From Octopus sinensis (lineage: Eukaryota): 64,000 nucleotides of DNA. The translations under genes and the position numbers were made by a program. The notes beneath the pieces were generated by a model. The model worked only from the letters and a program-made list of their open reading frames with translations. It did no database searches and had not been told where the DNA came from. This document shows positions 563-64,000 of this stretch, in pieces. The stretch is from contig NC_042998.1 in NCBI RefSeq assembly GCF_006345805.1, positions 83,638,001 to 83,702,000 on the forward strand, in the 5' to 3' direction. Numbering within the stretch: position 1 is the stretch's first letter; each line of letters starts with the position of its first letter.

Positions 563-1386
563 AATTTGGATTTATTCCTAACTCCAGCTGCTGTAATCAA
601 CTCATCGAATTTCTCGAGGACATTCCCCGAATCACTAATGACATCTCCTGTGTGGATGTTGTTTACCTGGACTTTGCTAAGGCTTTTAATTCTGTGCCAT
701 ACAAAAGACTTATGGTGAAACTCTCTGCAGTGGGTGTAAGAGATGATCTCTATAACTGGTTGATGTCCTTCATTATCGGCCGAAAAGAGGGTGTCACATT
801 TCTAGGACAGCACTCTTCAACTTATGAGATGACATCTGGTGTACCACAGGGATCTGTTCTTGGTCCCCTTTTATTTGTTGCATATATTAATACCCTACAT
901 CAGGCATTTGCCATATTTTGAACGCCTTACTTCTCTGGGCATGGATACATTGAAACTCCGACGTCTGGCAACTGACTTGGCAGACACCCATAAAATTATT
1001 AACCAACTTACTAACACTAACTCTGAGCACCTTTTCAAACTCCACCTGTCTAACACCCGTGGACATGTTTACAAAGTCAGAAAACAACACAGCTCCCATG
1101 ATTTTCGGAAACATTTTTTCACGCTAAGAGTTGCTGAAGTATGGTACAAACTGCCGGCATCAGTTGTTAGTTGTCCGAGCACTGCATCCTTCAAAACTTC
1201 CATGCTTCCTGAGATTCGCCAACACTACACCTGATTTTCTCCCCTCCATACACACGCAAGCATGTATCTGATTCATACACTGTTCACTTTCCAAACATTT
1301 GTACATTACTGCATATGCTTTATACGCACTTTTGACAAGTTGTAGTGCACCTGAGCACTGTATACAATAATTTCATTATTATTATT
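560..1386 (+). mobile_element. CR1-clade LINE 3' fragment with a large internal deletion
   Basis: QFGF, YLDFAKAFNSVP and SGVPQGSVLGPLLFVAYIN jump directly to HLPYFERL...FFTLRVAEVWYKLP. The 3' UTR (gttgtagtgcacctgagcactgta) and (ATT)n tail match the copy at 22527..23592. Confidence 0.85.
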
Positions 1387-2334: not shown

Positions 2335-3070
<736 letters not shown>

Positions 3071-3610: not shown

Positions 3611-4269
3611 CACCTAATAATAAAATTTCTAAAGGCAAGAAATGTAAATCTGGAGTTGATGAATTAACTAGTAATGGTTAAAGATATACATATGCAAAAG
3701 AAAAAAGACAGATTTCAGATGTTATCTGATGACCGTCGAAAAAAAGCTAAATATATGTAAATTTGGTCATTAGAATTGATAATAACTTTTTTGACGACTT
3801 TAAACTTTCTACATTTTCAACTGTACATTCCTCGATGATTAATTCCAAATTAACAAGAGACCCGGAACTTGACAGTATAAGCAAGCAAACGAATTCATGT
3901 CTTTGAAGCACACAGCAGTAAACTGTATTGTATCTTGTAAACTGTAGTTGTATCATGCTAAATAACATTGCCTATAGAGTTATTTAGCATGATAACATCT
4001 ACAGTTTTGTGCCCCACCTCGACTTTATTTTTTCTTAACGCTTTAAAAAATACGCTTTCCTCCACACCACCCCAGAAAAATAACAGTTTACAGAGATATA
4101 TTTTCAGAGTGTATATTATAATTATGGTGATAAAAAATTAAATACAAATGAAAAACGTTGAGAGGATTTCGAGTCATTTTCCCTATCCCAACTTTATTAT
4201 CACGTATTCCTGTGAATTTAACATTCTCTCCCGGCTTTTTCATTTTTGCCTTCAGATTTATATGTTTGA

Positions 4270-15600: not shown

Positions 15601-16285
15601 ATGTATATACACACATGTCTATATGTATGTATATACACACATGTCTATATGTATGTACACACACATACATGTGTATATGTATACACACACATGACTCGCT
15701 TCTTTCAGTTTCTGTCTGCCAAATCCACTCACATGGCCTATTGCTATAATCTAAGACATTGAACCTAGGACCATGTGGTTGGGTAGCAAACGTTTTGCCA
15801 CACATCTATGCTTGCACTCATTTGTTTTCCAATGATATTGTTTCATCAGCTTGTTTTCCACTTAAGTCCTCTTTTGCCACTCACTGAGGAGAAAACAGCA
15901 GGATGTCACTTATGTGTGTATTTACTCTCGTATCATTTACATAATGATTGAAGTCTTTCTGTGTTGTGCCAATGGGATAATATTTTCTCATTAGTTGCAA
16001 TAAGATACCACAACTGTAAATATTGATTTCAGCATGGGAAAATCAAACAAGTTTAAAAATATAAAGAAATTTATTGATAAATATGAGTGAGATGAAAAGA
16101 CACAAAATAAAAGATATAAGAGCGTAGGAGTGGCTGTGTGGTAAGTAGCTTGCTCACCAACTACATGGTTCTGGGTTCAGTCCCACTGCGTGACACCTTG
16201 GGCAAGTGTCTTCCACTATAGCCTCGGGCCGACCAAAGCCTTGTGAGTGGACTTGGTAGACGGAAACTGAAAGAAGCCCATTGTA

Positions 16286-16324
<39 letters not shown>

Positions 16325-19300
16325 ATGTATGTGTGTGTCTGTGTTTGTGCCCCCAACATCGCTTGACAACCGATGGTGATGTGTTTACATCTCTGTAACT
16401 TAGCTGTTCGGCAAAAGAGACAGATAGAATAAGTACTAGGCTTACAAAGAATAAGTCCTGGGGTCGATTTTCTTGATTAAAGGCGGTGCTCCAGCATGGC
16501 CACAGTCAAATGACTGAAACGAGTAAAGAGTAAATACTTAGACCTTTTTTTTTTGTCTAAGGCCATTACAATCTTTCAATGAAATCGTGATTTTATGATG
16601 TTTTTGAATATTTTTTAATTAATTAATTACATGGTCACATACCATGATGTATTTATTTGTATTCATGCCCAAGTATGTGTGTCTACTTATCAAGTTACAC
16701 CTCTACCTGCTTGCCTCTGCTTATCTATTCTACCTATCTGTCTATTCTACCCCCTCCCTCCTGAAAAGTAGAAATTGACAGCAACTGCTTTTAGTTCGTT
16801 TGTGGAAGGGATTTTGTGATTATAATCTTTTCAAATTGCTGGTGTGTGTGGAGAAGGAGCAAGGGTGTCCTTGTTGATTGACTTTATTGGTTCAAAATGT
16901 GGAGCATCGTTTGTTTGTCTGTGAAGATCACTGCAGGAAGTCATGTGTTATGACTTTGTTTTGTGAAGGTGTTTTCTCTTGGCTTTGTAGAGCAGATCTA
17001 ATTAGGTTAATTGGGGGCTAAAAGTGTATGAAGAGACAGGTGTCTTCAAGTTGGTCCACAATGTGGTGAGATGTTGCTTGGCCTGGTGGAACAGAATAGC
17101 ATGATACTCCTTTATTCTGTTACTTGTTTTAGTCATTTGACTGTGGCCATGCTGGAGTACCGCCTTAAAGGATGTTAGTCGAAGAAATCAACCCCAGGGC
17201 TTATTCTTTGTAAGCTTGGTGCTTATTCCATCAGTCTCTTTTGCCGAACCACTAGCGATGTCAGGTGGGGTTGTCAAGTGATAGCAGGGGGGAAAACACA
17301 GACACACATGCACAAATATATACACACATATACGAGGGGCGTTCAATAAGTAATGCCCCTGACCCACTTCCCATAGCAGTAGAGCAACGAAACTTGGCAC
17401 AGTTATTAGTCTTTTTCTACATAGGAACCACCCAGAGTTACGCATTTCTCCCATCGTTTGATGTGGCTCTGGAGACCGTTTTTGTAGAAGAACCCAGCTT
17501 GGTCCTCCAACCTCAACGTGACTTCAGAAATCAAGGCTGCATCATCTGGGAAACGCTTTCCTTTCAAAAACAACTTCATGATTGGGAAGAGGTGAAAATC
17601 AGAGGGTGCAAGGTCAGGAAAGTAGGGGGGGATGGGGAGGAGTTCATAGCCATACGCCTGTGCTTCTGATCTGGCGACAAGCGAGTTGTGGACCGGAGCG
17701 TTGTCCTGCAGGAGGAGGATGCCTTTGCTGATCTTGCCTCGCCTCTTGATTTTGATAACTTCTCTTAATTTCCTCAAAAGTGAAGCATAATAGGCTCCTG
17801 CAATTGTGGTACCCTTTGCCAGGAAATCTGTCATCACTACTCCGTCCTGGTCCCAGAAGACTGTGAGCATGACATTGCCAGCGGAGGGCTGCACCCTTGC
17901 CTTCTTTGGAGGGGGTGAGTCACGGTGCTTCCACTGCATTGACTGGGCTTTGGTCTCTGGATCATCGTGATGGACTCCGGTTTCATCCTGTGTAATCAGT
18001 CTTTTGAAAAATTTTGACTCATCTTCTTGGCACATCTCCAAATTCACCCTCGAGCACTCGACGCATTCTTGCTTCTGGAAAGGCATGAGCAACCTGGGAA
18101 TCCATCTGGCAGACACCTTTTGCATATGCAAATGGTCATGAATGATAGTTTCCACAGACCCGGTACTAATCTTGACCTCATGGGCTATTTGGCGAATAAT
18201 TATGCGTCGATCTTCCAAAATGGCAGCCTCAACTTGACGGACAGATGCCTCATCAATGGTAGAAGGAGGCGACCAGATCTGGGAGCTGTTTCCACAGAGT
18301 TCCGACCATGTTTGAATTCACGATGCCAGCGTTTTACAAGGTCATATGATGGGGCATCATCACCATAAGTTACTTTCATTTCATCAAAAGTCTCCCGTGG
18401 TGTGCGTCCTTTCAAATACAAAAATCGGATCACTGCTCGACACTCAACAGGCTCCATTTCACACTTGACTCGGTTCAAACACCTGTAAATCAGAAACCAC
18501 AATTAATTCAGTGCTGTAATTTGCCACTTAATCTATAGAGATATAAATGATTGCACATGCAAAATTTCAGCTAGATCAAACAACTGCAAGTGGGTCAGAG
18601 GCATTACTTATTGAACGTCCCTCGTATATATATATAAGACAAGCTTCTTCCAGTTTCCCTCTACCAAATTCACTCACAAGGCTTTGGTCAGTCCGAGGCT
18701 ATAGCAGAAGGCACTGGCCCAAAGTGCGATGCAGTGGGACTGAACCCAGAACCATGTGGTTGGGAAGCAAGCTTCTTACCACACAGCCATGCCTGCACCT
18801 ATGATTAGCAAATTTGTATAGGAATTGATGAGCAACTTGCTTGTGGTTGAATGTGTTTGTGGGTGAAGAACAGTTGGTGTGTGGTGTTAGTAGCATTTCA
18901 TGTCTCACAGTTATATGCATTCATATATGGAGGTACATTCATACATAGATGAGTTACACACAACATACAAGCATTTACAGATATGCTAACAAAATATACA
19001 GTTTTAAATGACATGCACTATACATAAAATACATGTGGAATCAATGCTAACACTGCTTACTTGTTAAAATTGCTCTTTTCATTTGATGCTGAATATCCAT
19101 ATTTATGTTTGTGGCTCTAACTTTCTGCAAGTAAAATCTCATTTTTATATCTAAAATTGGATTTGAAGCTTCTTCAGGGGAATAGCTTAGAAACAATGAG
19201 AGAAAATTTACTATTGCATATAAATACAATAATAAATGGAATAAAATTTAATAAAGTAAATTAATTCTGCCCTGAAATACATTAAACACTTACCTACAGT

Positions 19301-22300
19301 GACAATGAGAAATTGAGAAATATAAATGTAAAATAGAATGAAATCAAACAAGAAGCTTCATATTCAGTTTTAGCTACCATAAAAAGTCAATGGTTTTGCT
19401 CACAGAAACATGTTTATCTGAAGTTATAAATGCAAATTTATGTACAGCTGTTTTGTATGAAATGAGGTTATTTAATAATGGGGAAGCAATATTAGAGTCG
19501 GAATTCAGAATATAATTTCTCTGGAGCTAGTTTGTTCTAGGACCTTGAATTAGTTTCAAATTTGATTGTAAATTCTGTTCAGACTTTTCGTTTTTTTTTG
19601 TGTGTGTGTGTGTGTGTGTTGTTTATTCTGTAATCAATGATCAAGTACCCTCAGCCATAAACCCACTTCAAGTGCTATTATCATTTAAAGCAATAAAGTA
19701 AAACTTTTCCTATTTTACTATCTTCTGGCTTGTTTCAATCATTAGACTGTGGCCATGCTGGGGCACCACCTTGAAAAGTTTAATCAAACAGTACTTATTC
19801 TTTTTTAACTTTGGCACTTAATCTATTGGTGGACATCAGAACATCCAGACTTACCTAAATTTTTTTTCTTCTTCCAAGCTCTTAGAATTCATAGGGTTGG
19901 TTCTCCAGTATCTATGGCATATAAGTGAATGGGACCCCAGTTCATTGCAGGGTTCAAAGTCTACAATTTCAAGAAGAGGGGGCAAGTCAATTACATTCAA
20001 CCCAAATAGTTGACTGGTGTTTTATTTCATCAACCCTAAAGTAATGAAAGGCAAAGTCAACTTCCATGGGATTTGAACTCAGAATGTAGAATACCAGAAA
20101 TAATACCACTAAGCATTTTCTGCCAGCTCATATTATCACTTGATTAATGTATTTCAGAGAAGAATTAATTTACTTTATCAAATTTTATTCCATTGAAGGC
20201 AGCAAGCTGGCAGAATCATTAGCACACCGGGCAAAATGCTTGGCGGTATTTCGTCTGGCGCTACATTCCAAGTTCAAATTCCGCTGAGGTTGACTTTGCC
20301 TTTCATCCTTTCAGGGTCAATAAATATTAAGTACCAGTTGCGTACTGGAGCCAATCTAAGTGACTGCCCCCACCCTACCCTGTCCCCCCAAATTTTGGGC
20401 CTTGTGCCTAGAGTAGAAAGGAATTATTAGCATGCCAGGTGAAATGCTTAACAGTATTTCCTCTGTCTTTATATTCTGAGTTCAAATTCCACTGAGATTG
20501 ACTCTGCATTTTGTCCTTTCAGGGTCAATAAGATAACTAGTTGAGTGCTGGGATTATTTTAATCAATTTTGTCCTTCCCTCAAACCTGCTGGCCTTGTGT
20601 TAAAATTTCAAACCATTTTTTATTCCATTGGTAAAGTTCAGATTTCATAGTTATGATTCATTGAAAATAAAGTTATCATTGACTATTATGTTTGATGTTA
20701 ACGTATTTGTTACTTACTGAAATCACTTTTGTTTCTTTTCCCTACATCAGCTCCATGGATTTGAGACAAGTGCCATTAACTCTGTTCAACTCTCAAATCA
20801 TACAGGTAGGTCATATCATTATTTTGATATTCACTTTTCCATGCTGGCATTGATCTGACTAATATCATTCATGGATAACAACAAATATTCTAGTGGTCGA
20901 TGACAGTACTGCCTGAGTGGCACATAAAAAGCACTATTCGAGCGTGGTCGATGCCAGTGCCAGCTGACTGGTCCCATGCTGGTGGCACTTAAAATGCACC
21001 ATTCGAGTGTGGTCATTGCCAGTGCCACCTGACTGGCTCCCGTGCCGATTGCTTGTAAAAAGTACCATTGAAGCATGGTTGATGCCAGTACCACCTGACT
21101 GGCCCTTGTGCCTGCGACACATAAAAGGCACTCACTACACTCTCAGAGTGGTTGGCATTAGGAAGAGCACCCAGCTGTAGAAACTTTGCTAGATCGGATT
21201 GGAGCCTGGTGCAGCCTTCTGGCTTGCCAGTCTTCAGTCAAACCGTCCATATATAATATATTTAATGTAGTCATTTGTTTTGGCTGGTCAGAAAGTAACA
21301 TATTGCTGCTTAAAATATTTTTGTGACCTATGAAAAACTGACCGATATGTATGGATTTATCACTTCAGCTAGCCTGAGTAAAAGGTGAAAGAGCTGTTCT
21401 AGTGCTGCTTTGTTATAAACACACACGTCTATTTCCTTAATTTCTACAGGTTATCAATATTTCAAGGGTCAAGTACTTGGTGCTAAAGAGATTGACGAGT
21501 TATATGAAGGGCTCAAGCTGAACAAATTAAACAGTTTCTCTTTCATTCTGACAGGTAAGTGTAAATCTAAAACAAAAGCAAATTTTCCTAAAATTTTTAT
21601 TGCATATTAAAGAATGAAAGTTGAATTGTTTACAGGAGTGGGTCAGACAATACCAAGGTGAACAGGCTTCCTGTACAGCTATGATGTGTCAATGATCAAG
21701 TCACCATTCTCTAGCTATTTGGACTGGTGACTCTGTTCTATTTTAATGTTGGATTACCTACTGGAATGTTTTTGGTTCAAATACATTTCAAAGATTCTTT
21801 TGTTGTGAATGTGAGTAATTCACTTAATTCAACAATAATCCTAGCATGCTCATCTGTTGAAAGCACCTGGGAATGTTATCTATCATACATGTATATGTGT
21901 GTGTGTGCCTTATCCATATATAAATTCTCTCTTTTGCTTATATATATTTATAAAACCAGGGCTTAGCACAGACTCAAAAACTCCCATCCCCTCAGGGCTT
22001 ATGAGCCATTATGTGACTCATTATCTTTCAGCAATTATGTTCTTTCTAACAGTTTGTGAAAATTTTTGAATTTTTGGTTTTGTCTTTGCTAACCTGAGAT
22101 AGAATCTCTGGAAACAGACTGGACAAATCAAAAGCATGTTCAGAAGAAAGGCACAAAAGTTGAAGTTGGTAGTACAAAATATTTAAATTGAAACAAAAAT
22201 AAATCTCAGAAATTTATATATATATATATATATATACATATAAAAGTAAATAAATGGCACAACGAAGCACCGATACTTACTGGAAAATAGCGAACGTAAT

Positions 22301-23648
22301 AAATACGACGCTAATGTATAGCTTCACTGCGTATGTACTAGTAAAGATGCGTGTGTGCAACAAACATTTTTTCATGTTTGTTGCACACACGCGTCTTTAC
22401 TAGTACATACGCAGTGAAGCTATAAATTAGCGTCGTATTTATTACGTTCGCTATTTTCCAGTAAATATCGGTGCTTCGTTGTGCCATTTATTTACTTTTA
22501 TATGTATAATTTTACCCTTACGGGCTATAATAATAATAATAATAATAATAATAATTGTGTACAGTGCTCAGGTGCACTACAACTCATCTAAAGTGTATAT
22601 ATAATCAGGTGTAGTTTCGGCGGATTTCGGAAAGCATGAGGCCTTAAAAGATGCAGTGTCATGGCAGTCAACAACTGACACAGGCAGTTTATTCCATGCT
22701 TCAGCAACTCTGAGCGTGAAAAAATGTTTCCGAAAGTCATGGGAGCTGTATGTTTTCTGACTTTGTAGGCATGTCCACGTGTGTTAGACACATGGAGATC
22801 AAAAAGGTGTTCAGTGTTGTTGTTGGTGAGGTGGTTGATAACTTTGTGGGTGTTTACCAAGTCCGTCGCCAAATGCCGGAGCTTCAGTGAATCCATGCCC
22901 AGGGAAACAAGGCGCTCAGAATATGGTAGGTGTCTGATGGAGGGTATGCGTTTGGTTGCACGTCTCTGGACAGATTCCAGGAGGTCAATGTTCTGTGCAA
23001 GATAGGGGTTCCAAACTGATGATGCGAATTCCAAGTGTGGTCGTACCATAGCTGTATACAGTTTTAAATAGATGGCTGGAGAGCGGCTAACAAAAGACCT
23101 GCTGAGTGATGCCAAGACACCCTCGGCCTTCCTGACAATCTTAGAGATATGCTTTGACCAACGCAAATCACTGCTGACAGTGATGCCTAGGTCACGCTCG
23201 CAAGAGGATTTCTTGATATCAGTGTTGTGGAGGGAGTATGTGAACGCAGGGTTTTTTCTCCCAAAATGCATGGTGGTACACTTGTCCACAGCCAGTTTCA
23301 GTTGCCAGTCTGTGATCCATTGCTGCATTGTGTCTAGGTCTGATTGCAGGAAAGAGTTGTAGACATCAGGATCTGTCCTCTTGATTTCAAGGTACAGCTT
23401 GATGTCGTCTGCATATTTCAATACTGTGGCATTCTTTAAATTGGCATCTATGTCGTTAATGTATGCCACAAACAAGAGGGGACCAAGGACAGATCCCTGT
23501 GGTACACCCGATGACATCTCATATGGTGTAGAGTGCTGTCCTAGAACTGTGACTACCTCCTTTCGGCTGAGGATGAAGGATTTCAACCAGTTAAAAAGGT
23601 TTAAAAATTGCTTTACTGGAAAGCAATACTCTCGTATTGCATTACTAT

Positions 23649-23688
<40 letters not shown>

Positions 23689-26600
23689 TCCTTGTCTTGC
23701 AAGCTCATTGAGGCTGGTGCCACATATAAAGTGCTAGTGTTGGTCCCATGTAAAAAGTACCCAGTACACTCTGTAAGGTGGTTGGCATTTGGAAGGGCAT
23801 CTTGGCTTAGAAGCCATACCAAAATACAATTGGAGCCCAGTGCTGTGCTATGGCTTGCCAAACCAAGGTACATAACTCTAGCTGGCTTGGATGGAGTGAA
23901 TTCTGGAGTCTGAAGAAACTGGTGTTGGTCTGTGTTGCAGAGGGAATGTAGAATCAGATGATACTTCAAGTAAGAGGTAAAAGTAGAGAAATAACAAACA
24001 GAGAGAACAACAGACAAAGCAGTAACACCTTGAAAATAATAGTTTAATTGTTGTAAGGGGACATCTTGATCCTCATCATTATTTAACGTCCACTTTGCCA
24101 TGGTTGTATGGGTCAGACAGAATTTATTCTAACAGACTTTCTACTACTGGGTGCCCTTCCTGTTTCCCAGCAAAAAAATATTCTCATGGCCAGACATTTT
24201 TTAAGACTAGAAATTAATGATCTCACTTATATGATGGTGAGGCTCATTTACAAGGAGTACACACACACACACAGGTTTTATTTTCTGTCTACCATATCCA
24301 CTCATAAGACTTTAGTTGGCCCAGGGCTATAGTACAAAGGACTTGCTCTAAATATTGTGCAGTGGGACAGAACTCAAGACCACATGGTTGGAAAGCAAAT
24401 TTCTTAGCCATACATGCTTTCAACTAAGCGTAAAGAGTTGAGTAGCAGTGATATTGCTACTAGGCCTGTAATTACGTGGGTAAATAACTGAAGTGAAGGG
24501 GTAAAGTGACAGCATGAGAGAAACCTAAGGTGGGAGGTGAACAAAAAAGGGGGAAGCTAGTAATTGCAGAGGGAATGTAGAATCAGATGATGCTTCAAGC
24601 AAGATGTACGAGTAGAGAAATAACAAATAGAGAGAACAGCAGACAAAGCAGTTACACCTTGAAAATAATAATAATGGTTTCAAATTTTGCCACAAGGGCA
24701 GCAATTTTGGGGAAGGGATGAAGTTGATTACATTGACCCCAGTGTTCAACTGGTACTTATTTTATTGACCCTGAAAGGATGAAAGGCAAAGTCGACCTCA
24801 GTGGAATTTGAACTCAGACTGTAGCAGTAGACGGAATGCCATTAAGCATTTCACCCAGCGTGCTAACGATTCTGCCAGCTCACCACCTTTGGAAAGTAAT
24901 AATAATAATTCTTATTACTATATGCACAAGACATGAAATCTTGTGAGAGGGAGCTAGTCAATTACATCAACCCCAGTGCTCAACTGGTACTTATTTATTA
25001 ACCTGAAAAGGATGGACAACAAAATTGACATCTAAGTATTAAAAACCAGAAGGAATGCTGCTAAGCATTTTCCCAACATGCTGTTCTGCCAGCTTACCAC
25101 CTTATTATTAGTAATAGTAAAATAATAATAATGATAAAAAACACTGGTTCAGTCCATTTAGTTGTAAACATGTTTGATGGTGTAACAGGTCCTTACTGTA
25201 GGATTGGTGGAACATTGTAAATTATCAGTTCAATGTGTGTGGCGACAATGTTGCCACTGTATGTTTTAACCAATTCTATTATCACATCACCAATATGGAC
25301 ATATTATGAATAAACTATATATGTTATAAATTATTTCTCATTATAAGTTCACTATATAGTTGTCACTCATTTTATATGTATTATAGATTAAGGAAGTCTG
25401 ATATTTGATGTGTTCTTCCCCCCCCCCCAATTGTGTGTGTGTTAAATATATCTTTTTGTAACTCAGACATTGGATGTGTAGTTAAGATGTTTGATTCTCA
25501 TCCATATGGCTTCAGGTTCAATCCCACTGTAAAGCACCTTTGGCAAGTGTCTTATACGATAGCCCCCAGGCTAGCCAATGTCCAGTAAAGGAATTTAAAT
25601 GTTTACAATCTACACCAAGCTACAATTATGAACGGTGACATCCTTATTTGTGACTTAACTGAAACTGGTGACATTTGTTGATATTTGCTGTGTTCTAGTC
25701 CTGAACTTCTGAATTCCTCATCATCATCATTTAACATTGCTTTCCATACTGACTTGGGTCAGATAGTTTGGCAGGAGCTAGCAAGCCAGAGGGTTACACC
25801 AAGCGTGTTTTGACATGGTTTCTACGGGTGCAATGCCTTTCTGACTGCCAACCACTTTACAGAATATACTGGGTGCCTTTTACATGATACCGGCATAGGT
25901 GCTTTATTTAAAACAAGGTGTCTGAACAGATGATTTTTTTACGTGGGACCAGAACAGGTGCCTTTTTACATGGCACCAGAACAGGTGCCTTTTTACATGG
26001 AGCCAGAACAGGTGCCTTTTTATGTGGCACCAGTACCAGCAGGGTCACAAAAACAATGAAAAATCCCTTACTTGAAAAGTTGGTTATGTTTGACAACAGG
26101 AAAAGCTTCTGACTATAAAAATCATGCCTGAAATACCTCCCTCAATCACATCAAAGCTGTGCTTAAATGAATGAGTGAATTTCTTTTTGTTCAACAATTT
26201 TTATTCCTCTGTATAGTTACTGTTTTATGGTTCAGGTTGACCGTTGAAATTTCTCAGTACTAAGGTTGACTTATTGTTTATATTCTTTTTTTATATTTTC
26301 TGAATGAAATCCACATTACCTCTGTCATTAAAGAGTGTCAGAAACTAAAAAAATGCAATGAAATCTTTCTTTCAAATACTAAAATTGTCTATATTTGATA
26401 ATAAAATTTTACGTTATGAGAGAGGTTTTTTTTCAATTAAAATGTACCTGAATGTCTAAATTCAATGCTTCTGGTTAACACTTCATAAAATACATGTTTA
26501 TTATGTTGCACTGGCACGAGTTCTTATTTATGTGTCTTCACTGACAGTTTCATGTCATTGGCTTACTATGCTATTTTACATATCAAGCTTTCTATTCTAG

Positions 26601-29800: not shown

Positions 29801-32800
29801 GTCACAGATCTTGATCAAGAACAAGGATCACTTTACACCAATGAAGTACAGACAACTGACTCAACACTTACAGTAAACTACCACACATGTACAATCTCCC
29901 TAAGATTCACAAGGATGGTATTCCATTAAGAACTATAGTGAGCTGTAGAGGTTCAGCATGTCATCTACTGAGCCGCTTCCTTGTGGATATAATCAGTCCA
30001 TTAGCAGGAAAGTCAACATCATACATAAAGAATTCCACCCACTTCACAGAATTGATCAAGGATACTCCCATTGAATCTAACCAAATGGTGAATCTAGATG
30101 TGATAAGCCTGTTCGCCAAAGTCCCAACGTTGATACAGGAAAAACTAGTGACAGACACCCATCTAAAAGGATGCACTAGTATACCAATAAGATACTTGAT
30201 GGAAATGTTGACCTTCTGTGTAGAAACTACCCACTTCAGTATGGACACTGATATATATCAACAAGAAGAGGGTTTGGCTATGGGTTCGACATTATCACTG
30301 TTAATAGCCAATATATACACGGAATACTTTGAGAATTTGGCTTTAGGATCAATACCACTAAAACCAACATGATGGCTACGATATGTTGATGACACCTTTA
30401 TACTCTGGCCCCACTAGGAAGATGTCCAAGTGCTGTGAGATCATGTGAACTCAATAAAGCCATCCATATGGTTCACAATGGAAAAGGAAAAAAACAATCA
30501 GCTGGCATTCCTGGATGTATTAATAACATGCACCAAGTATGGATTCAGGACATCCATGTACCGCAAGCCAACCTTTACTGGACAATGCCCCAACTTCAAT
30601 TCCCACCTTCCATACAGTGTAAAGAGAAGGATTGCTCAGTGCTTAAAACATTGTGCAAATAATATAAGTAGTGATCGTGATACACACCACGAAGAAATGA
30701 TCTGTTAAGCAACAGCTACCCCAAAAGTATACTATCCACTCAAATTATGAAGAAGAGAGAGGATGAGGCTAATAAACTGTCCACAGTCTGTCTATCCTAT
30801 GTGAAAGGCCTCTCTGAAAAGATACAAAAGATATACAGCCCATATGACATCAGGATAGTATTCAAGAGTAATACAGCACTTCACAAATATCTCCTTCAAG
30901 TAAAACCAACAATAGAAGAGAATATGGCCAAAGATTGCATGTAATCATCCCATGCAGCTGTGGTTGGTGATACAAAGGCGAAACATGCCGCCCCCTCAAA
31001 ATAAGGGTAGACAAACATCGCAAAGCTGTGACACGAGGAGATATTGATAAATCAGGTATAGCTGATCATGTATGGAAAAATGGAGACCACCTCCCCCTGT
31101 GGGATGAAGTTAAAATAATAGACAGAGAACACCACTGGAAAATACGAAAACTAAAAGAAGCAGCACATAGCTAGGACACAACAACCTCCTAAGCAGACCG
31201 AGTGCAGATATGAGCAGCATATGGGAACCAGTATTAAGGAAGGATAGAAAAATATTAGATTTAATAGCCCTAAAATTCACTCCATAATTGCCCACAGGCA
31301 TATGGCATAGTGGTTAAAAGTGCAGGCTTCTAAACCCAAGATTCCAAGTTCGATTCCAAGCAGTGACCTGAACAATAATAAAAATAATAATAATAACATC
31401 GAAAAATACCTTTGGAATGAGAACCCAGGTTCGAATTTTCCCCAAGACACCTGAAGAAGGCTGGAGGGTATATCAGCCCAAACGTTGTGTTAACAAACAA
31501 GATGAGGACAAATATCCTTCAAATGTAATAATGTACATAATTCCTCATCTCTTAAATATAGTACAGCAGTGAATCAAGACTGAAATTAATGAACTGTTGT
31601 TGTTGTTTAATTCCAGCTTAGTTTAGTTGAATAGTTGAAGCAGATCTATGATCAAAGATGCTCCAACTGTGACCATCCAATTCTAAAATGGGTTCTTATA
31701 AGCACTCAGCTCATGCTATATAGTGGTTGGCAATAGGAAGAGCATCCAACCATAAGTTGGCCAACTCCATGACAAACTATCCAACCTATGCCACCCTGGC
31801 ATTTCACCGACAATCTGTCATTCTAGCCTCTTCCTGTTTACTCCCGCTTTCTTTTCTATAATGTGACTGGCCTTGTAGGTTTCCTACAGCATGAAATCTG
31901 TTCTGTTCTGGCACTTATCTTTCTAACTTGAACCCCTCACCTCATAGCATGCAGCTGACTTCCTCTGCTGTAGTCCAACTCAGTCAAAGGGGATCTTAGT
32001 CTTGCAAACGGTTTGGTGGCCTCCCTAGTAATGCTGGTGTCACAAAAAGTGCTTGGTACACTCTGTAAAGCAATTGGCATTAGGAAGAGCATCTTGTCAT
32101 AGAAATCATGTCAAAACAGAGACTAGAACACAATGCAGTCATCAGATCTGTTGGATCCTGTCAGACCATCCAGCATGAGAGCTGGACATTAAATGATAAT
32201 GTATTCATGTATATGCATGTAGGTATATACAGGTCGGCCCAAAAGTAGGTTTACAGTTATTCAACTATCTCTTCTGCATTCATATATTAACAGTTTAGAT
32301 CTTAAATATAAAAAAAAAATTATGCTAATTTAGGTAATCTTGTCAAGCTCTCTTCCCACTTTTTAAGATAGAAATTTAAATGTAATAAAATGTTTTAAAA
32401 GAAATTTAAAGTGCCAACGTGATAACTGTAAACCTACTTTTGGGCCACCCTGTATGTTAGGGTGAGATCTGGATGTTATACCTAGCATGGCAAGTCCAGT
32501 GTAGTCTCCTGTTCGATTTGTAGTTGTGTGCAAGGTACATAACTCTATTTGCCTTAGCTATGTTTCATTTTTGATGTTTAATTGCTAGAAATGCCATCCA
32601 GCTGTATGAAAATGAACGAACCACAATAAGCTCACTTTTCCTCTTTCATGTAATGTTAGCATAGTAAATTATTTGAAGAGTAAACCTATTCATGTATATG
32701 TGTGTGTGTGTGTGTCCATCTGTTTATTGAATGGTTCTAATGTATACGTATGTATATTTATGTGAATGACTTACAGAAAACAAGTTGCATGAAACTGCTT

Positions 32801-57890: not shown

Positions 57891-58572
57891 AGAGAGAGAG
57901 AGAGGAAACAACAGAGATAGAAAGCTCTCATATCTCCCATAGCTAGAAAGCTACTCCTTCAAAAGAACTCCTATACTTAACGTCTAGGAAGTTAAATCAG
58001 GCAGATAGGATAGTCTTTTGCCAAATGATATTATAATGCAATGCATGTTAATAACCCGATAAGATATCCATTTCGTTCAATCTCTTCAAAAGTCCCCTTT
58101 GACTACGCAGAATATTCAGTTTCAGTAGAATTGGATAAATACAATTTATAAAAAGTTTTGTTTGTTTTTTGATTCGATACTTGCAGAGAATCAATGGTTT
58201 ACTGACATTTCTTTAAGAGTAGTGGTTCTCAAGGGAATAGTTTGATTTCAATTCATCTTTTGATTCATGAGTGTTAGTTCTGAAATCTCTTTATGGTATC
58301 AGCTTAGAATATGTCAACTAATACCAATCCTATTTTTGCGGCAGACAGACAAACAATACCAAATGACTGTCACAAACAAGAGTATTATCTGACAATGTTT
58401 TTGCTTTCAGCTTATGCTAGGCAATCACCTGCGAATGCAATAAAGAAAAGTTTATATTGTTTAAACAAAGCGAGCTATAAGAAATAACCCAATCGTAAGT
58501 AGTGTTTGAACACTATAGACAAATACAGTTGTATCGAAAATTATAAAACATAAATTCTCAATTTATTAAAAT

Positions 58573-59163
58573 TGTAACGAACTTAGTGAGAGCGAATATA
58601 TCTTCTCTTGTACTTTCGGGGTACAAGAAAGCAATCACTAGCCGTTGCTTTAATAATCCAGAATTCTACCAGTCAGAAACAACAAGACGCAGACGTAAAA
58701 GATATATATACTACTTTATTCTCTGATGTTGTAACAGTAACAATAAGTGGTTATCTGATGTCCTTGGTTCTGGGCGCGCAAGGCTGAAAGTTAATCGATT
58801 GTAATATTTACAATGTTTAGCAGCTAAAACAGAACGGGTTAAAGATGGCGTCCGGAACAGGGAAGATGAATGTGGTCGGCAACAATTTGGTGAAAACCTT
58901 CGGCCGACTGCTATCAGAGCTGGACAGCTAGAAAATATACGTCCGTCGCTGCTGTCCCAAGTCCCCGCTGACTGCTGCTAGTGGTCAAACGTTCTACGAC
59001 CCCCTTGCCTCGCTAACTGCTACGTAGGCAATAGGGTTCTTCTTCCGGTGCTTCGCGCACGCGCGAGAGGGCCCTTCCTCTCTCTTGGTGAAGGCACCAA
59101 CACCACACGCGCGAAATAGAAAATGGACGGTGCGCGCGCGCGCACCGTTATAGGATCACTACA
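58573..59163 (-). repeat. 3' LTR (591 bp)
   Basis: Differs from 60683..61272 by one 1-nt indel and two substitutions; minus-strand AATAAA at 58715..58720. Confidence 0.95.
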
Positions 59164-59166
59164 AGG

Positions 59167-59175
59167 CTCCCCTCC
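59167..59175 (-). other. Polypurine tract
   Basis: Minus-strand GGAGGGGAG, 3 nt before the 3' LTR. Confidence 0.8.
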
Positions 59176-60661
59176 AGTGCGTAGCACGACACAAAATCCT
59201 TTGTAGTGACTTTAAAACTCAAGGTGGACACCCGATAACCAAATAGCACACAATATAATAAGATGGCAAAATTTATAACATACACAAGAAATTTACTAAA
59301 GGAAAAAGAGAAAAAATACTCAATGAGCAAAAATCAAGAGTGCATGCATGAAAGTGTATACGTCACAAAGTATAAAGCCTTCCGCTGACCAGCGGAAGGA
59401 AAGCAAAACTCACAGTTAATGAACCTAGGTGAAATTAAATCCAACTTCTCTAAAGGTAGTTGATCCTGCGAAATAGCAGTTAAATCAATTGCTGCAGGAG
59501 AGGAAATGGAACTGACAGATAGATCGCTAGTAACACAAAAGGCAAAAGTGCAAACATGCTAGTGTGATGCGCGACACAGATAATTTTCTTTTATTTACGT
59601 GACCAACAGTGGTCTAACAGGGAAAAATAATTACGCCTAACCATGGCGCAGCGCATGTGAACATCCGACGTCCTATGAGTCGGGAAAAACTAAGCTACTG
59701 CAAACGTGTTGCAAAAAACAAGGCAAGCACACGTGCGGAGCAAAAGGTGCATGAAATGCAATAGTGCTTGCCAGACCGAAAGACAGCAAATGAACATGCC
59801 AGTGGTTGAGCGATCATATGCCTCGTTCGTACAGGAACAAAGGTATGGCATGCCGGCGCGTTATAATGGACAAACAACCCTCTCTATGTATACGTGACCC
59901 CTAGGGTCTATAGAAATGAGGTGTGTCCACAAAAGGCAAATTTAGCATGGAACAAACAAGCGAGAAAAGCATGTGTGACGTATGTATGTGAGAGAGATAG
60001 CATTTATGTGTGTATACGTGTGTGCGACAAAAATACATACAAGGTGAATGCGAGCAAAAAAATAATACAGCGCATAGAAAAATGTCTCTCATGGCTATCT
60101 CAGACAATGGTTAATTTACCAGTCTGTAATAGCCTGATGCACAATAGCAGTTCGTTCTGTAACAGAAATGTTGAAATCACAAAAATGCAGATGCCGGTTG
60201 AACACAATGTGTAGCGGTTGTAGCTTCGATGATGTGACATGTTAACTGGAACAGAAGAATATCGTAGATAGACGGTGCTGTTTTTCCTTGGTGTGCATAT
60301 GCACATACAGCGTGCACGCTAAAGTTCCGCGAGTTGCTATGTACATCTTGGTCGACGGTGTTGAAAGGCGACTGTAGTGGACTTGAGACAACATCGTTCT
60401 TAGTGATGATGGCGACGAAGATAACGACGACGTGAAGTAGAAAGACGACGATGGCGATGACGAAGGTGGAGAAAAGGCATCGAATATATGATGGCGCCCG
60501 TCATCATTGCTGTAGAATAAGAAAGAGGCTCCTTCTACAACTGTTTGTGGTGGCCGGAAACAAATCATCGAAAGATGATGACTGCGTAGAGTTAAATCGT
60601 GTTCCGACTTCGCAGAAAAACTGGATTTTTTTTTTGTTAAGTGATCTCTGGTTTTAGACCA

Positions 60662-60681
60662 GAATCACGTCGGGGTCACCA
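60662..60681 (-). other. Primer-binding site complementary to the tRNA-Trp(CCA) 3' end
   Basis: Minus strand TGGTGACCCCGACGTGATTC, 1 nt after the 5' LTR. The plus strand GAATCACGTCGGGGTCACCA equals the remembered 3' 20 nt of metazoan tRNA-Trp including CCA. Confidence 0.92.
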
Positions 60682-60682
60682 C

Positions 60683-61272
60683 TGTAACGAACTTAGTGAG
60701 AGCGAATATATCTTCTCTTGTACTTTCGGGGTACAAGAAAGCAATCACTAGCCGTTGCTTTAATAATCCAGAATTCTACCAGTCAGAAACAACAAGACGC
60801 AGACGTAAAAGATATATATACTACTTTATTCTCTGATGTTGTAACAGTAACAATAAGTGGTTATCTGATGTCCTTGGTTCTGGGCGCGCAAGGCTGAAAG
60901 TTAATCGATTGTAATATTTACAATGTTTAGCAGCTAAAACAGAACGGGTTAAAGATGGCGTCCGGAACAGGGAAGATGAATGTGGTCGGCAACATTTGGT
61001 GAAAACCTTCGGCCGACTGCTATCAGAGCTGGACAGCTAGAAAATATACGTCCGTCGCTGCCGTCCCAAGTCCCCGCTGACTGCTGCTAGTGGTCAAACG
61101 TTCTACGACCCCCTTGCCTCGCTAACTGCTACGTAGGCAATAGGGTTCTTCTTCCGGTGCTTCGCGCATGCGCGAGAGGGCCCTTCCTCTCTCTTGGTGA
61201 AGGCACCAACACCACACGCGCGAAATAGAAAATGGACGGTGCGCGCGCGCGCACCGTTATAGGATCACTACA
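60683..61272 (-). repeat. 5' LTR (590 bp)
   Basis: Direct repeat of 58573..59163; adjacent to the PBS. Confidence 0.95.
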
Positions 61273-61870
61273 AAATTATCTACGTTTCCAGAGGGTGTGT
61301 CTTAATTATCAAATGGTAATTATGATCAGCCCTACTTGAGAAGGGGCGATCAACTAAAAATGAAGAATCCGCCAAATTTGACATGCCGTTATGAAAAAGG
61401 ACAGAATTATTGTCTGGTGATAAGAAGACGAGTCGTGGACGCATATTTTTGGTTCAACATCAACAGCACGACAGTTGTATCACCTTATATCCAGTAGGGA
61501 AAGGACTTAAGCTTATACAAAAAGGTGTAAAACAAAGTCATGGCCTTGGTAATATGAATAATCCAAACAAGAATGATCCAACAGAAATAATTCTGAGTGA
61601 CCAGAGACTTGTATTTGAACAGCATAATCAATGGTTTACTGACAGGTATATCAAATACTACAGAACATAATAAATTCTTGATTTATTAAAATTATCTACA
61701 TCTCTAGATGTCTTAATTATCAAATGGAAATTAAGGAGAACTGCGTTTAATAAGGGAGATAATCTCGAGACTCAAGGATCCTCCAAAGTTGACATGCCAT
61801 TAATGAAGAGGACAGGTTTATTATCTGGAGATAAGAGGATGATCGTAAACACGTGTTTCTGGTTCAGTAA
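61273..61870. repeat. Diverged tandem duplication (about 416-bp period once the LTR element is removed)
   Basis: 58551..58572 plus 61277 onward aligns with 61671 onward (taaattct..atttattaaaat tatctac...cttaattatcaaatgg...gacatgcc...ggttca). Confidence 0.75.
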
Positions 61871-62049
61871 CGGTAATAATTGTGTCAGATTTGGATAAAA
61901 GGCCAGCAATGTAATGCAAAATAAAAGACAAGTCAAGTACTGAGGTCGTTGTAATCCAGTTCTCTCTCAAATTTCACTTTGTATCTCAAAGGAATAAAAA
62001 GAAAGAATTGACCCTGGCGGCATTTGAACCTAAAGCGTAAAGACCTTCC

Positions 62050-62710
62050 ATGTTTTAATTGGTTCAATTACTGGAACCTGAAATCAGAACGTGAAACCGG
62101 AAGAAATGCCGCTAAAAATTGCTTTTCCCAACATGGTAACGGTTCTGCCAACTCGCTACCTTTATCTTCAGATAAAATATGGAATCGAGCCTTTCTACGA
62201 CAGACACAAGGTTGAAATCTGATCGACACAGTACTTCACTGGTACTTATTTTATCGATCCCGGGGGATGAAAGGCAAAGTCGACTTCGACGGAATCTGAA
62301 CACGAGTTCTCTCAAATCTCACTTGTATCGATCTCAGAGGAATAAAAAGAAAGAATTGGCCCTGGTGGGATTTGAACCTAGAGCGTAAAGACCTTCCATT
62401 TTTTTCAACTGAACCGCCCCCATACTGGGGTATCGCTTTAAAGGATTTTAGTCGAGTAAATTGACAGCTGAATGAAATACTGCTAAGCACTTTTCCCGGC
62501 AAAGTAACGGTTCTGCCAACTCGCCGCCTTTGTCTTCCTCCAAAATACTGATTTCATATTTTGAGACAAGGCTAGTAATTTCGGTGAGGAGTTGTTGATT
62601 GCATCGACACCAGTACTTAACTGGTATCTATTCCATCGACGAAAGAGAAAATCGGCATCAGTGGTATTTGAACTCGGAATGCAAGGAGCCAGAAGAAATG
62701 CTGCTAACAG
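62050..62710 (-). mobile_element. Rearranged minus-strand cluster of the second SINE family
   Basis: ggatgaaaggcaaagtcgac and ggttctgccaactcgc recur; a segment of about 100 bp (61950..62055) is duplicated at 62305..62405. Confidence 0.6.
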
Positions 62711-62809
62711 TCGACAATGTATGAAAACAGATAAATTCAAAAGAGCTTTAAAAAAAAACAAAAAAAAAAACAGTGAAGAATTGTACATCGGAAAATTTTA
62801 GGAGTAAAG

Positions 62810-62902
62810 CAGTATGTGTGCGCGCACATGCATATACATACGCATATATACATACATATATGTGTGTTTGTGCACACGCACATACACACACACATATATA
62901 TA

Positions 62903-62964
<62 letters not shown>

Positions 62965-63095
62965 GTATGTATGTATGCATATGTGTGAGTATATATATAC
63001 GCGCGCATGGATGCATATATGTGTATGTGTGGACAGAGAGAAGACTGAGAGAAAAAGAGACAGACAGACAGACAGACAGATAGACAGACAGATAC
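62810..63095. repeat. Compound (CA)/(TA)/(TG)/(GACA) microsatellite
   Basis: Directly visible; source of the spurious ORFs at 62748..63110. Confidence 0.95.
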
Positions 63096-64000
63096 AGCTG
63101 CGGTGAGCATCTTTATCTTTGTTCAATTTCCGGACAATAATAACCCATATTATGTTATCATGTCACGGAAAGTACGTACGATTAAAAGCATTGAATTATG
63201 GGATGTTGTGAGTAAATCCTCTTTTATTTTTATATATTTATTCTTCGTGCCTGTTTAATGTCAAAGGTAAATGTTACACATCCGTGAAAAGTACATAAAT
63301 CTATGTAGCCTGTTATTGGTTTCAAATTTTAACACAGGGGCAGCAATTTCGGTGGTGGGAAGTAAGTCGATTATATCGAACGTAGTACGCAACTGTTACT
63401 TATTTTATCGACTCCGAAAGAATGAAAGGCAAAGTCGACCTCGGCAGAATTGGAACTCAAAAGTGAAGACGAACGAAATGCTGCTAAGCATTTTGTCCAG
63501 CGTGATAACGACTCTACTAGCGCGCCACTTTCTTGAAGTCTGGTATCAATCCATTTTAACCCACTGTCCTCGTTTGAGGACAGTTGTATTTGGTTTGTTT
63601 ACTGCAATAAAGGTTAATTGAACGCAAACCATTGTATTTGGTTTATTTACTGCAACAGTGGTCAACTGAACGCTTCCGTATGTTTCTTATTCCTATTCAT
63701 ATAACTATCTTCAAAATTTCGACAGGGTTAACCTGAGTTAAAATGGGTTAACTGCTACCAGGAGAAACATGCATGAAATAATAAGGTGTAGTGAATCTTG
63801 CATGCATGAAGTGGATTCGATCCACCATAGCCAAATTTAAATTAACGCTGCAACAGAAATGTTCCCATGGTGGAACAATGGTTTTTCTCTGACAGCAGTT
63901 TTACATTTTCCAGATGCCTTTAGCTCGGCCGAAATAATGTCTTCACCACTTGACCCTTTCTAACCTCTTCTACTTCACCAAAAGCTAGACCACCAACTAA

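What the first reader, a model, noticed from the sequence alone, without database searches (positions are those of the whole stretch)
58573..61272. Young, fully non-coding LTR retroelement primed by tRNA-Trp
Seen: LTRs of 591 and 590 bp differ at only 3 positions, with a perfect 20-nt tRNA-Trp PBS, PPT, TG..CA ends and a 4-bp TSD. The 1.5-kb interior has no gag, pol or env similarity that I can recognise. Both substitutions are CpG-to-TpG, one in each LTR (58953/61062 and 59060/61169). Established: such cis-only elements (TRIM/LARD-like) parasitise an autonomous Ty3/Gypsy partner and are less often described in animals. Inference: a recently active non-autonomous family implying an active tRNA-Trp-primed helper. 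The CpG changes hint at methylation, but n=2.
Basis: partly seen in the sequence, partly recalled or inferred. Interest (0 to 1): 0.7.

Follow-up and report, generated by a model that had tools for sequence, protein, structure and literature searches.

The report
Young protein-less LTR retrotransposon in octopus
A recently inserted 2.7-kb LTR retrotransposon copy in an octopus-type genome has everything it needs to be copied and nothing to copy itself with; this is a known kind of genomic parasite, here seen as a single copy whose helper could not be found.

Summary
Window 58573-61272 is a complete LTR retrotransposon. Its two LTRs (591 and 590 bp) differ by two substitutions and one single-base length change. 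It has TG..CA ends and a 4-bp target-site duplication (AAAT). A nearby paralogous repeat unit shows the uninterrupted target site.

Three details need adjusting:
- The element lies on the minus strand.
- The primer-binding site matches 19 nt, not 20, of the mammalian tRNA-Trp 3' end.
- The host is an Octopus-like cephalopod.

The 1519-bp interior shows no coding signal by any test:
- It has no Pfam hit in six frames.
- It has no significant homologue among 1.8 billion representative proteins.
- It does not match gag or pol of 14 autonomous elements that carry the same primer site.
- Its longest open stretch is within chance.

The copy therefore needed proteins supplied in trans. It is not a TRIM or a LARD by size. 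No second copy and no helper could be found, because no searchable collection holds cephalopod DNA. "Recently active family" is therefore untested.

A CsRn1-clade Ty3/Gypsy helper is the best inference from the literature (tRNA-Trp priming, 4-bp duplications, common in cephalopods). However, BEL/Pao and Gmr1-like elements use the same primer site. Verdict: a new member of a known kind, of modest interest.

The parts
58569..58572 (.). Target-site duplication, left copy (AAAT)
   Evidence: A single AAAT is present in the paralogous uninterrupted site.
58573..59163 (-). 3' LTR of the element (left copy on the plus strand), 591 bp
   Evidence: It is 99.5% identical to the other LTR. CpG o/e is 1.18.
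59167..59175 (-). Polypurine tract GGAGGGGAG, 3 nt upstream of the 3' LTR
   Evidence: Read from the junction sequence. Its function is inferred from position and composition.
59164..60682 (-). Interior, 1519 bp, with no detectable coding capacity
   Evidence: It has 13-33 stops per frame and no Pfam hit at E<=1 in six frames. Nothing matches gag or pol of 14 autonomous elements with the same primer site. It has no match elsewhere in the window and no internal tandem repeats. The sense strand is T-rich (T 0.34, A 0.23).
60245..60664 (-). Longest open stretch (140 codons), directly downstream of the primer site; judged not coding
   Evidence: It has no homologue in 5.8 billion protein clusters. 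An exhaustive HMMER search of 1.84 billion representatives gave only a translated 4x tandem repeat and a low-complexity match. Its length is within chance (P=0.17). The product is not on record.
60663..60681 (-). Primer-binding site, 19 nt complementary to the tRNA-Trp(CCA) 3' end, one spacer base (60682) from the 5' LTR
   Evidence: One search gives the sequence. The identity with the mouse tRNA-Trp-CCA-4-1 3' fragment comes from PMC7555719. It also fits the tRNA-Trp primer motif reported for the CsRn1 clade in PMC2582038.
60683..61272 (-). 5' LTR of the element (right copy on the plus strand), 590 bp
   Evidence: Candidate signals on the sense strand are a TATA-like run at 60812-60820, AATAAA at 60825-60830 and ATTAAA at 60759-60764. 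The U3/R/U5 limits are inferred, not shown. No small-RNA-like sequence was found in it.
61273..61276 (.). Target-site duplication, right copy (AAAT)
61565..61887 (+). Paralogous, uninterrupted copy of the target site (neighbouring unit of a local repeat of about 410 bp)
   Evidence: The joined flanks (58273-58572 plus 61277-61500) align across the junction with this stretch.

Best explanation

It keeps every part that acts in cis:
- two near-identical LTRs with TG..CA ends;
- a primer-binding site for tRNA-Trp;
- a polypurine tract.

It encodes none of the proteins (Gag, protease, reverse transcriptase, RNase H, integrase).

Inferred life cycle, following the established scheme for LTR elements:
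1. An RNA is started in the 5' LTR and ended in the 3' LTR.
2. The RNA is packaged by the Gag of a related coding element.
3. tRNA-Trp annealed to the 19-nt site primes minus-strand DNA, and the polypurine tract primes plus-strand DNA.
4. The helper's integrase joins the TG..CA ends at a 4-bp staggered cut. This made the AAAT duplication.

What is shown: the cis parts, the clean insertion, its youth and the absence of coding capacity.

What is inferred:
- that movement happened in trans;
- that the copy belongs to a propagating family;
- that the helper is a CsRn1-clade Ty3/Gypsy element, the lineage that combines tRNA-Trp priming, 4-bp duplications and a wide presence in cephalopods.

Since insertion the copy has begun to decay at CpG sites, as expected in methylated DNA.
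For: Structure and insertion:
- LTR pair, ends, duplication and orientation.
- Paralogous empty site.

Primer identity:
- 19 nt equal the tRNA-Trp-CCA 3' end (PMC7555719).
- It fits the CsRn1-clade primer motif (PMC2582038).

No proteins:
- Pfam in six frames found nothing.
- A word-based search of 5.8 billion clusters found nothing.
- An exhaustive HMMER search of 1.84 billion representatives gave only artefacts.
- tblastn with gag and pol of CsRn1-like, Gmr1-like and BEL/Pao elements that share the primer site gave a best E of 0.5. The CsRn1-like gags recognise each other at E 1e-19 to 1e-65.
- The longest open stretch is within chance.

Youth:
- There are 2 substitutions in 590 bp and none at non-CpG sites.
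- CpG o/e is 1.0-1.2 in the element against 0.2-0.45 in the adjacent 45 kb.
- It is the only repeat above 92% identity in the window.

Host:
- The CR1-like RT is 75-78% identical to Octopus proteins.
- 27% of the window matches repeats in 62 kb of three Octopus genomes.

Helper inference:
- All CsRn1-like elements have 4-bp duplications and a tRNA-Trp primer site (PMC2582038).
- The CsRn1 clade is present in 9 of 12 cephalopods.
- All 275 LTRharvest copies in O. bimaculoides are Gypsy (PMC6238403).
Against: - Only one copy has been seen, so family membership is not shown.
- No helper was found. There is no gag or pol of the three candidate lineages in the window or in 62 kb of Octopus DNA. The last protein search, with a CsRn1-like gag, returned ticks and unnamed contigs but no cephalopod.
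- The same primer site is used by BEL/Pao and Gmr1-like elements, so the primer does not identify the helper's lineage.
- The sense strand of the interior is T-rich. This is unlike the A-rich coding strands usual in retroelements (my knowledge) and is unexplained.
- The polypurine run is short (9 nt) and lies 3 nt from the LTR.
- The host's own tRNA-Trp was not available. The assignment rests on mammalian sequences in papers.
- In alphaproteobacteria the same 18 nt end a tRNA-Arg. That is irrelevant to a eukaryotic host, but it shows that the string alone does not name the tRNA.
Confidence: 0.6

Rival explanations
1. This is a one-off internally deleted copy. An autonomous tRNA-Trp-primed element lost almost all of its coding region in a single event, for example template switching during reverse transcription. 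The defective product was integrated once, and no family with this structure exists.
For: Only one copy was found anywhere that could be searched. Some autonomous elements with this primer site have long stretches before their long open frame: about 0.8 kb in L023 and 1.5 kb in L112. A derivative that kept only untranslated ends could therefore lack coding remnants.
Against: The element is young. Any retained piece of gag or pol should still be open and recognisable, yet nothing in 1519 bp matches gag or pol of three lineages or any Pfam family. In the CsRn1-like elements examined, the gag frame opens 2-100 nt after the primer site in four of the five, and 284 nt in L064. A deletion product of such a parent should therefore start with gag, and this one does not. 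The collections searched contain almost no cephalopod DNA, so the absence of copies says little.
Confidence: 0.25
2. The reading is the same (a trans-mobilised, non-coding element), but the helper is a BEL/Pao or a Gmr1-like Gypsy element rather than a CsRn1-clade element.
For: The identical 18-nt primer site is carried by BEL/Pao elements (L026, L062, L116, L010, L113) and by Gypsy elements with integrase ahead of reverse transcriptase (L112, L023, L111). The Gmr1-like loci end their LTR in GTTACA or GTAACA, as this element does.
Against: BEL/Pao elements were not detected among well-preserved copies in O. bimaculoides, where all 275 copies were Gypsy (PMC6238403). The LTR-end likeness is only 6-7 nt. 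No other similarity to these loci exists.
Confidence: 0.2
3. This is a chimaera. The LTRs, primer site and polypurine tract come from a retrotransposon, and the interior was captured from a co-packaged host or foreign RNA.
For: The interior's composition differs from that of the LTRs and is T-rich on the sense strand. It resembles no retroelement protein.
Against: No host match for the interior was found in the window or in 62 kb of Octopus DNA. Its CpG o/e of about 1.0 is unlike the CpG-depleted host DNA around it. There is no poly(A) remnant or second set of junction features inside.
Confidence: 0.08
4. It is not a true insertion but an assembly or duplication artefact that produced two identical 590-bp blocks.
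For: None beyond the near-identity of the blocks.
Against: Several features fit a true insertion:
- the TG..CA ends;
- the primer site and polypurine tract at the exact inner edges;
- the 4-bp duplication;
- a paralogous site that is continuous across the junction.
Confidence: 0.01

Closest known systems
TRIM (terminal-repeat retrotransposons in miniature), reported in plants, ants and wasps, cestodes, bivalves and fish (PMC10886601)
   Same: Both have two LTRs, a primer-binding site and a polypurine tract at the inner edges, no protein, and mobilisation in trans by a coding LTR element.
   Different: TRIMs are under 1000 bp with short LTRs. This element is 2700 bp with 590-bp LTRs and a 1.5-kb interior.
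LARD (large retrotransposon derivatives of cereals; definition from my own knowledge, not checked here)
   Same: Both have a non-coding interior between LTRs and depend on a Gypsy-type helper.
   Different: LARDs are several times larger, with kilobase-scale LTRs and a conserved interior of about 3.5 kb, and they are known from plants. Conservation of this interior across copies could not be tested.
CsRn1-clade Ty3/Gypsy elements (CsRn1, PwRn1, AgCR-1 to -14, Kabuki; PMC2582038, PMC6238403)
   Same: Both have a tRNA-Trp primer site of the same motif, a 4-bp target-site duplication and TGT-type LTR starts. The clade is widespread in cephalopods.
   Different: Those elements encode a Gag with a CHCC motif and a full Pol. 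This element has neither and shows no sequence similarity to five CsRn1-like gags or their pols. The published members have LTR ends modified to AAA or ATA, whereas this one has ACA.
Mouse ETn/MusD and VL30 (from my own knowledge, not checked here)
   Same: These are mid-sized LTR elements with a non-coding interior that spread using the proteins of a related coding element.
   Different: They are vertebrate retrovirus-derived families with known helpers and many copies. Here the host is a mollusc, and neither copies nor a helper are known.
TRIMp3: Cassandra, Helenus and Ajax (PMC10886601)
   Same: They are non-autonomous LTR elements. Animal Helenus elements also make 4-bp duplications.
   Different: Their LTRs carry a tRNA- or 5S-rRNA-derived polymerase III promoter. 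No such sequence is present in this LTR (ARAGORN; Rfam).

Membership tests
LTR retrotransposon (structural definition) | Two direct long terminal repeats ending in TG...CA | tested here: met
   The LTRs are 591 and 590 bp, 99.5% identical, with TGTA...TACA ends.
LTR retrotransposon (structural definition) | tRNA primer-binding site next to the 5' LTR and a polypurine tract next to the 3' LTR | tested here: met
   A 19-nt site 1 nt from the LTR matches tRNA-Trp. A 9-nt purine run lies 3 nt from the other LTR.
LTR retrotransposon (structural definition) | Short target-site duplication and an identifiable empty site | tested here: met
   AAAT lies on both sides. A paralogous uninterrupted site has a single AAAT. 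An orthologous empty site was not available.
Autonomous Ty3/Gypsy, BEL/Pao or Copia element | Encodes Gag and Pol (protease, RT, RNase H, integrase) | tested here: not met
   There is no Pfam hit at E<=1 in six frames and no tblastn match to gag or pol of three lineages. No CCHC or CHCC motif is present.
TRIM | Total length under 1000 bp with short LTRs (PMC10886601) | tested here: not met
   The element is 2700 bp and its LTRs are 590 bp.
TRIM | No coding capacity, with primer site and polypurine tract retained | tested here: met
LARD | Large size (interior of about 3.5 kb and kilobase-scale LTRs; my knowledge) | tested here: not met
   The interior is 1519 bp and the LTRs are 590 bp.
LARD | Non-coding interior conserved among many copies | not testable with these tools
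   No cephalopod genome can be searched by nucleotide sequence here, and only one copy is known.
CsRn1 clade of Ty3/Gypsy (as relative or helper) | tRNA-Trp primer site | tested here: met
   It fits the motif in PMC2582038.
CsRn1 clade of Ty3/Gypsy (as relative or helper) | 4-bp target-site duplication | tested here: met
   AAAT. All CsRn1-like elements have 4-bp duplications (PMC2582038).
CsRn1 clade of Ty3/Gypsy (as relative or helper) | Gag with the CHCC motif (CX2HX9CX3C) and RT/RNase H that group with the clade | tested here: not met
   There is no such motif and no gag or pol similarity. The element cannot be placed by protein phylogeny.
CsRn1 clade of Ty3/Gypsy (as relative or helper) | Nucleotide similarity of LTR, U5 or leader to a coding octopus element | not testable with these tools
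   No octopus LTR element could be retrieved.
TRIMp3 (Cassandra, Helenus, Ajax) | tRNA- or 5S-rRNA-derived sequence inside the LTR | tested here: not met
   ARAGORN found none. Rfam found none at gathering score and none in the element at E<=1.
Multi-copy, recently active family | Several near-identical copies at different loci, with insertion polymorphism | not testable with these tools
   No other copy was found in the window, in 62 kb of Octopus DNA, in JGI metagenomes or in IMG/VR. None of these is a census of the host.

The most novel reading that the evidence does not exclude
The copy is a sample of a currently active, cephalopod-specific family of mid-sized non-coding LTR elements. Such a family would fall between TRIM and LARD in size and would ride on a live tRNA-Trp-primed CsRn1-clade Gypsy element. 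That would mean LTR retrotransposition is going on in octopus germ lines, in a genome where LTR elements make up under 1% of the DNA.
Probability: 0.35. Interest if true: 0.45.

Novelty: new member of a known kind. Interest (0 to 1): 0.3.

Why it matters
Non-autonomous LTR elements are well known in plants and in several animal groups. My literature searches found no description of one in cephalopods.

If this copy belongs to a family, two things follow:
- It would point to a still-active helper in octopus, whose LTR-element content is small and Gypsy-only in the one published survey (PMC6238403).
- It would give a dated, clean marker for how fast newly inserted CpG-rich DNA decays in a CpG-depleted region of a mollusc genome.

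As a single copy it is an ordinary, well-preserved example of a known parasitic strategy.

Tried and rejected
**Looking for other copies**
- Exact look-ups of the element's two longest ORF products found nothing on record.
- A homologue search with the 140-codon stretch gave no hits.
- An exact scan for the LTR end plus primer site found nothing in JGI metagenomes or in IMG/VR. A scan for the LTR start found nothing in IMG/VR.
- blastn and tblastx of the LTR and the interior against 154 loci fetched through the primer site matched the primer site only.
- blastn of the window against 62 kb of O. sinensis, O. bimaculoides and O. vulgaris DNA gave many shared repeats, none in the element.

**Looking for the helper**
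- tblastn with nine polyproteins and five gags against the window and the Octopus loci found nothing.
- The last protein search, with a CsRn1-like gag, gave 15 hits and no cephalopod.

**Confirming the tRNA with tools rather than papers**
- ARAGORN found no tRNA in the window, in eight eukaryote-like loci or in the Octopus loci.
- In bacterial contigs the same 18 nt end a tRNA-Arg(CCT). I rejected this as irrelevant to a eukaryote.

**Other points**
- Four further window ORF look-ups, meant to locate the source record, found nothing on record.
- The representatives hit P0136 (E 3e-8) was rejected. It is a translated four-fold tandem repeat, and one unit scores only 29.6 bits.
- Sub-threshold 'miRNA' Rfam hits at 62.8-63.0 kb are microsatellite artefacts.
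- The nine IMG/VR contigs that carry the primer site (L121-L129) were deliberately not read, because they may be genomes of animal retroviruses.
Full report
**1. The observation**

A repeat search and a pairwise alignment confirm two direct repeats at 58573-59163 (591 bp) and 60683-61272 (590 bp). They differ by two substitutions and one single-base length change in a short A run. Each is a C/T difference at a CpG site, one in each LTR.

The repeats start with TG and end with CA. Eight of the twelve terminal bases are inverted-complementary. AAAT lies immediately outside both ends. In the whole 64-kb window this is the only long repeat above 92% identity. The many SINE-like and LINE-like repeats around it are 60-92% identical.

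**2. Orientation and cis elements**

The sequence complementary to a tRNA 3' end lies at the inner edge of the right-hand LTR, and the purine run lies at the inner edge of the left-hand LTR. The element therefore reads on the minus strand. The right-hand copy is the 5' LTR.

- On the sense strand the 5' LTR ends in ...GTTACA, followed by one spacer base and then the primer-binding site.
- On the plus strand, 60663-60681 is identical to the last 19 nt (CCA included) of mouse tRNA-Trp-CCA-4-1, as printed in Table 5 or 6 of PMC7555719.
- The 20th base differs from the mouse tRNA. 'Perfect 20 nt' is therefore not confirmed against that reference, and the host's own tRNA could not be obtained.
- The site also fits the tRNA-Trp primer motif reported for CsRn1-like elements (PMC2582038).
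- The purine run GGAGGGGAG (59167-59175) lies 3 nt from the 3' LTR.
- On the sense strand the LTR has a 22-nt perfect palindrome containing (GC)6 near its start. It also has AATAAA at position 443, a TATATATAT run at 453-461 and ATTAAA at 509.
- One self-consistent but untested reading is: TATA-like box, transcription start near 485, ATTAAA as the poly(A) signal, and therefore a short R and a U5 of about 55 nt.

**3. A true insertion**

The right flank belongs to a local repeat: 61273-61456 resembles 61689-61866. I joined the two flanks with a single AAAT and aligned them to the neighbouring unit. The alignment runs straight across the junction (joined-flank positions 191-506 against window 61565-61887), and the neighbouring unit has one AAAT at that point. 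This paralogous empty site shows a precise insertion with a 4-bp duplication and rules out an assembly artefact.

**4. Host**

- A CR1/jockey-like reverse-transcriptase ORF at 22588-23586 (minus strand) has its highest-identity matches (75-78%) in Octopus sinensis, O. vulgaris and O. bimaculoides proteins.
- I fetched 62 kb around three of those genes. 17.5 kb of the window (27%) matches repeats in that small sample, with median identity 79% and up to 93% to O. vulgaris.

The window is therefore from an Octopus-like cephalopod. The element itself has no match there.

**5. The interior is non-coding by every test available**

- All six frames are stop-dense: 13-23 stops on the sense strand and 25-33 on the antisense strand, in about 506 codons.
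- No Pfam family is hit at E<=1 in any frame.
- The longest open stretch (140 codons, directly after the primer site) has no homologue in a word-based search of 5.8 billion protein clusters.
- In an exhaustive HMMER pass over 1.84 billion representatives it gives only two artefacts. One is a translated four-fold tandem repeat whose single unit scores 29.6 bits. The other is a low-complexity match.
- Its length is within what the interior's dinucleotide composition gives by chance (P=0.17).
- There is no CCHC or CHCC zinc-knuckle motif.
- No known RNA family or tRNA is present in the element. It is therefore not of the Cassandra/Helenus/Ajax type.

One point is unexplained. The sense strand of the interior is T-rich (T 0.34, A 0.23). 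In my experience the coding strands of retroelements are A-rich.

**6. What else carries this primer site**

An exact scan for the 18-nt site found at least 120 metagenome contigs, 9 IMG/VR contigs (not read) and 34 bacterial contigs. In the bacterial contigs the string is the 3' end of an alphaproteobacterial tRNA-Arg, which has no bearing on a eukaryote.

Among the metagenome contigs, the autonomous elements with the site just inside an LTR fall into three kinds:
- Ty3/Gypsy elements of standard domain order whose gag has the CHCC motif of the CsRn1 clade (L009, L018, L074, L096, L064);
- Gypsy elements with integrase ahead of reverse transcriptase, the Gmr1 arrangement (L112, L023, L111);
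- BEL/Pao elements (L026, L062, L116, L010, L113).

The primer therefore does not identify the helper's lineage. None of these loci shares anything with the octopus element beyond the primer site, and none of their gag or pol proteins matches the interior (best E 0.5). The CsRn1-like gags recognise each other at E 1e-19 to 1e-65, and their frame opens 2-100 nt after the primer site in four of the five loci (284 nt in L064). A fresh deletion product of such a parent would be expected to begin with recognisable gag, and this element does not.

**7. Which helper?**

Two papers bear on this:
- PMC2582038 states that all CsRn1-like elements make 4-bp duplications and carry a tRNA-Trp primer site.
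- PMC6238403 reports the CsRn1 clade in 9 of 12 cephalopods. It also reports that all 275 well-preserved LTR-element copies in O. bimaculoides are Gypsy, and that LTR elements make up under 1% of mollusc genomes.

On this basis a CsRn1-clade Gypsy element is the most likely helper. This is an inference. I could not retrieve any octopus LTR element to compare.

**8. Age and CpG decay**

LTR divergence is 2/590 = 0.34%, and it is zero at non-CpG sites. I have no calibrated octopus mutation rate. With assumed rates of 1e-9 to 1e-8 per site per year this would be roughly 0.2-1.7 million years. This range is an illustration, not a result.

- The LTR has 39 CpGs. Under a uniform model the chance that both substitutions are CpG transitions is 0.002-0.004.
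- The element's CpG o/e is 1.0-1.2. The 45 kb to its left has 0.2-0.45, and the 2 kb to its far right has 0.9-1.06.
- This fits a recent arrival of CpG-rich DNA at the edge of a methylated, CpG-depleted domain, now starting to decay.

Two caveats apply. The direction of each change cannot be set without a third copy. Both differences are C/T on the plus strand, which is G/A on the element's sense strand, so with n=2 an origin during reverse transcription cannot be excluded.

**9. Classification and verdict**

The element meets the structural definition of an LTR retrotransposon and fails the test for an autonomous one.
- It works like a TRIM or a LARD, but it is neither. TRIMs are under 1 kb (PMC10886601), and LARDs are several times larger (my knowledge).
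- Functionally it is closest to mid-sized protein-less elements such as mouse ETn or VL30 (my knowledge).

Whether it is one of a family or a one-off product cannot be decided with the collections at hand, because none can be searched for cephalopod DNA. I rate it a new member of a known kind. Interest is 0.3.

Noticed in passing
window 22233-22508: This is a near-perfect large palindrome with 135-nt arms, 98% complementary, and a 6-nt spacer. It lies just 3' of the CR1/jockey-like RT ORF (22588-23733, minus strand). The same sequence matches an O. vulgaris locus (L166 6809-7116) in both orientations.
   Followed up: partly
window 16126-18794: This is a mariner-type DNA transposon remnant. It has a Transposase_1/DDE_3 ORF at 17406-18317 (minus strand) and an upstream ORF at 18203-18502. 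It is bounded by 170-nt inverted repeats (16126-16295 and 18625-18794, 85% complementary).
   Followed up: partly
window 440-1234 (+) and 22588-23733 (-): These are two copies of one CR1/jockey-like non-LTR element (RVT_1). They are about 81-85% alike and in opposite orientation. Their best protein matches are in Octopus species.
   Followed up: yes
window 29860-30372 (+): This ORF has a weak RVT_1 match (E 7.5e-4). Its N-terminal motif looks Penelope-like to me. That reading is from memory and was not tested.
   Followed up: no
window 4001-6000: This stretch has a very strong GC skew (+0.52). It carries several RT-like ORFs on the plus strand (4270-5931), probably another non-LTR element. It was not analysed.
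   Followed up: no
window 1-64000: CpG depletion is domain-like. CpG o/e is 0.7-0.9 in 1-12 kb, 0.2-0.45 in 12-57 kb and 0.9-1.06 in 61.8-64 kb. The LTR element sits at the right-hand boundary.
   Followed up: partly
window 2536-3034, 15125-15704, 62748-63110: These are long compound TA/CA-type microsatellites that produce spurious long ORFs in all frames. At 62.8-63.0 kb they also produce sub-threshold Rfam 'miRNA' matches.
   Followed up: yes
window 20177-54622 (at least 13 sites): This is a SINE-like dispersed repeat family of about 150-220 bp with copies 60-80% identical. Inverted copies also occur. It is also present in the Octopus loci.
   Followed up: partly
window 58463-58572 plus 61277-61900: The element landed in one unit of a local repeat of about 410 bp with at least two units, 73-88% alike. 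Further right, 74-nt blocks at 61983-62056 and 62331-62404 contain a tRNA-like T-arm and acceptor string, but ARAGORN calls no tRNA there.
   Followed up: partly
L137, L139, L149, L051, L107, L138 (bacterial contigs): The 18-nt string that ends animal tRNA-Trp is also the 3' end of tRNA-Arg(CCT) in several alphaproteobacterial genomes.
   Followed up: yes
L093 (three copies), L052 and L115 (two each), metagenome contigs: These contigs carry tandem copies of the tRNA-Trp primer-binding site 27-54 nt apart. This arrangement is unusual and was not looked into.
   Followed up: no
L112, L023, L111 (metagenome contigs): These are Gypsy-type elements with integrase ahead of reverse transcriptase (the Gmr1 arrangement) and a SCAN-like gag domain. 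They use the tRNA-Trp primer site, and their LTRs end in GTTACA, GTAACA or CTGACA.
   Followed up: partly
window 61236-61257 and 59127-59148: There is a 22-nt perfect palindrome containing (GC)6 near the sense-strand start of each LTR (U3). It is an alternating purine-pyrimidine run of unknown significance.
   Followed up: no
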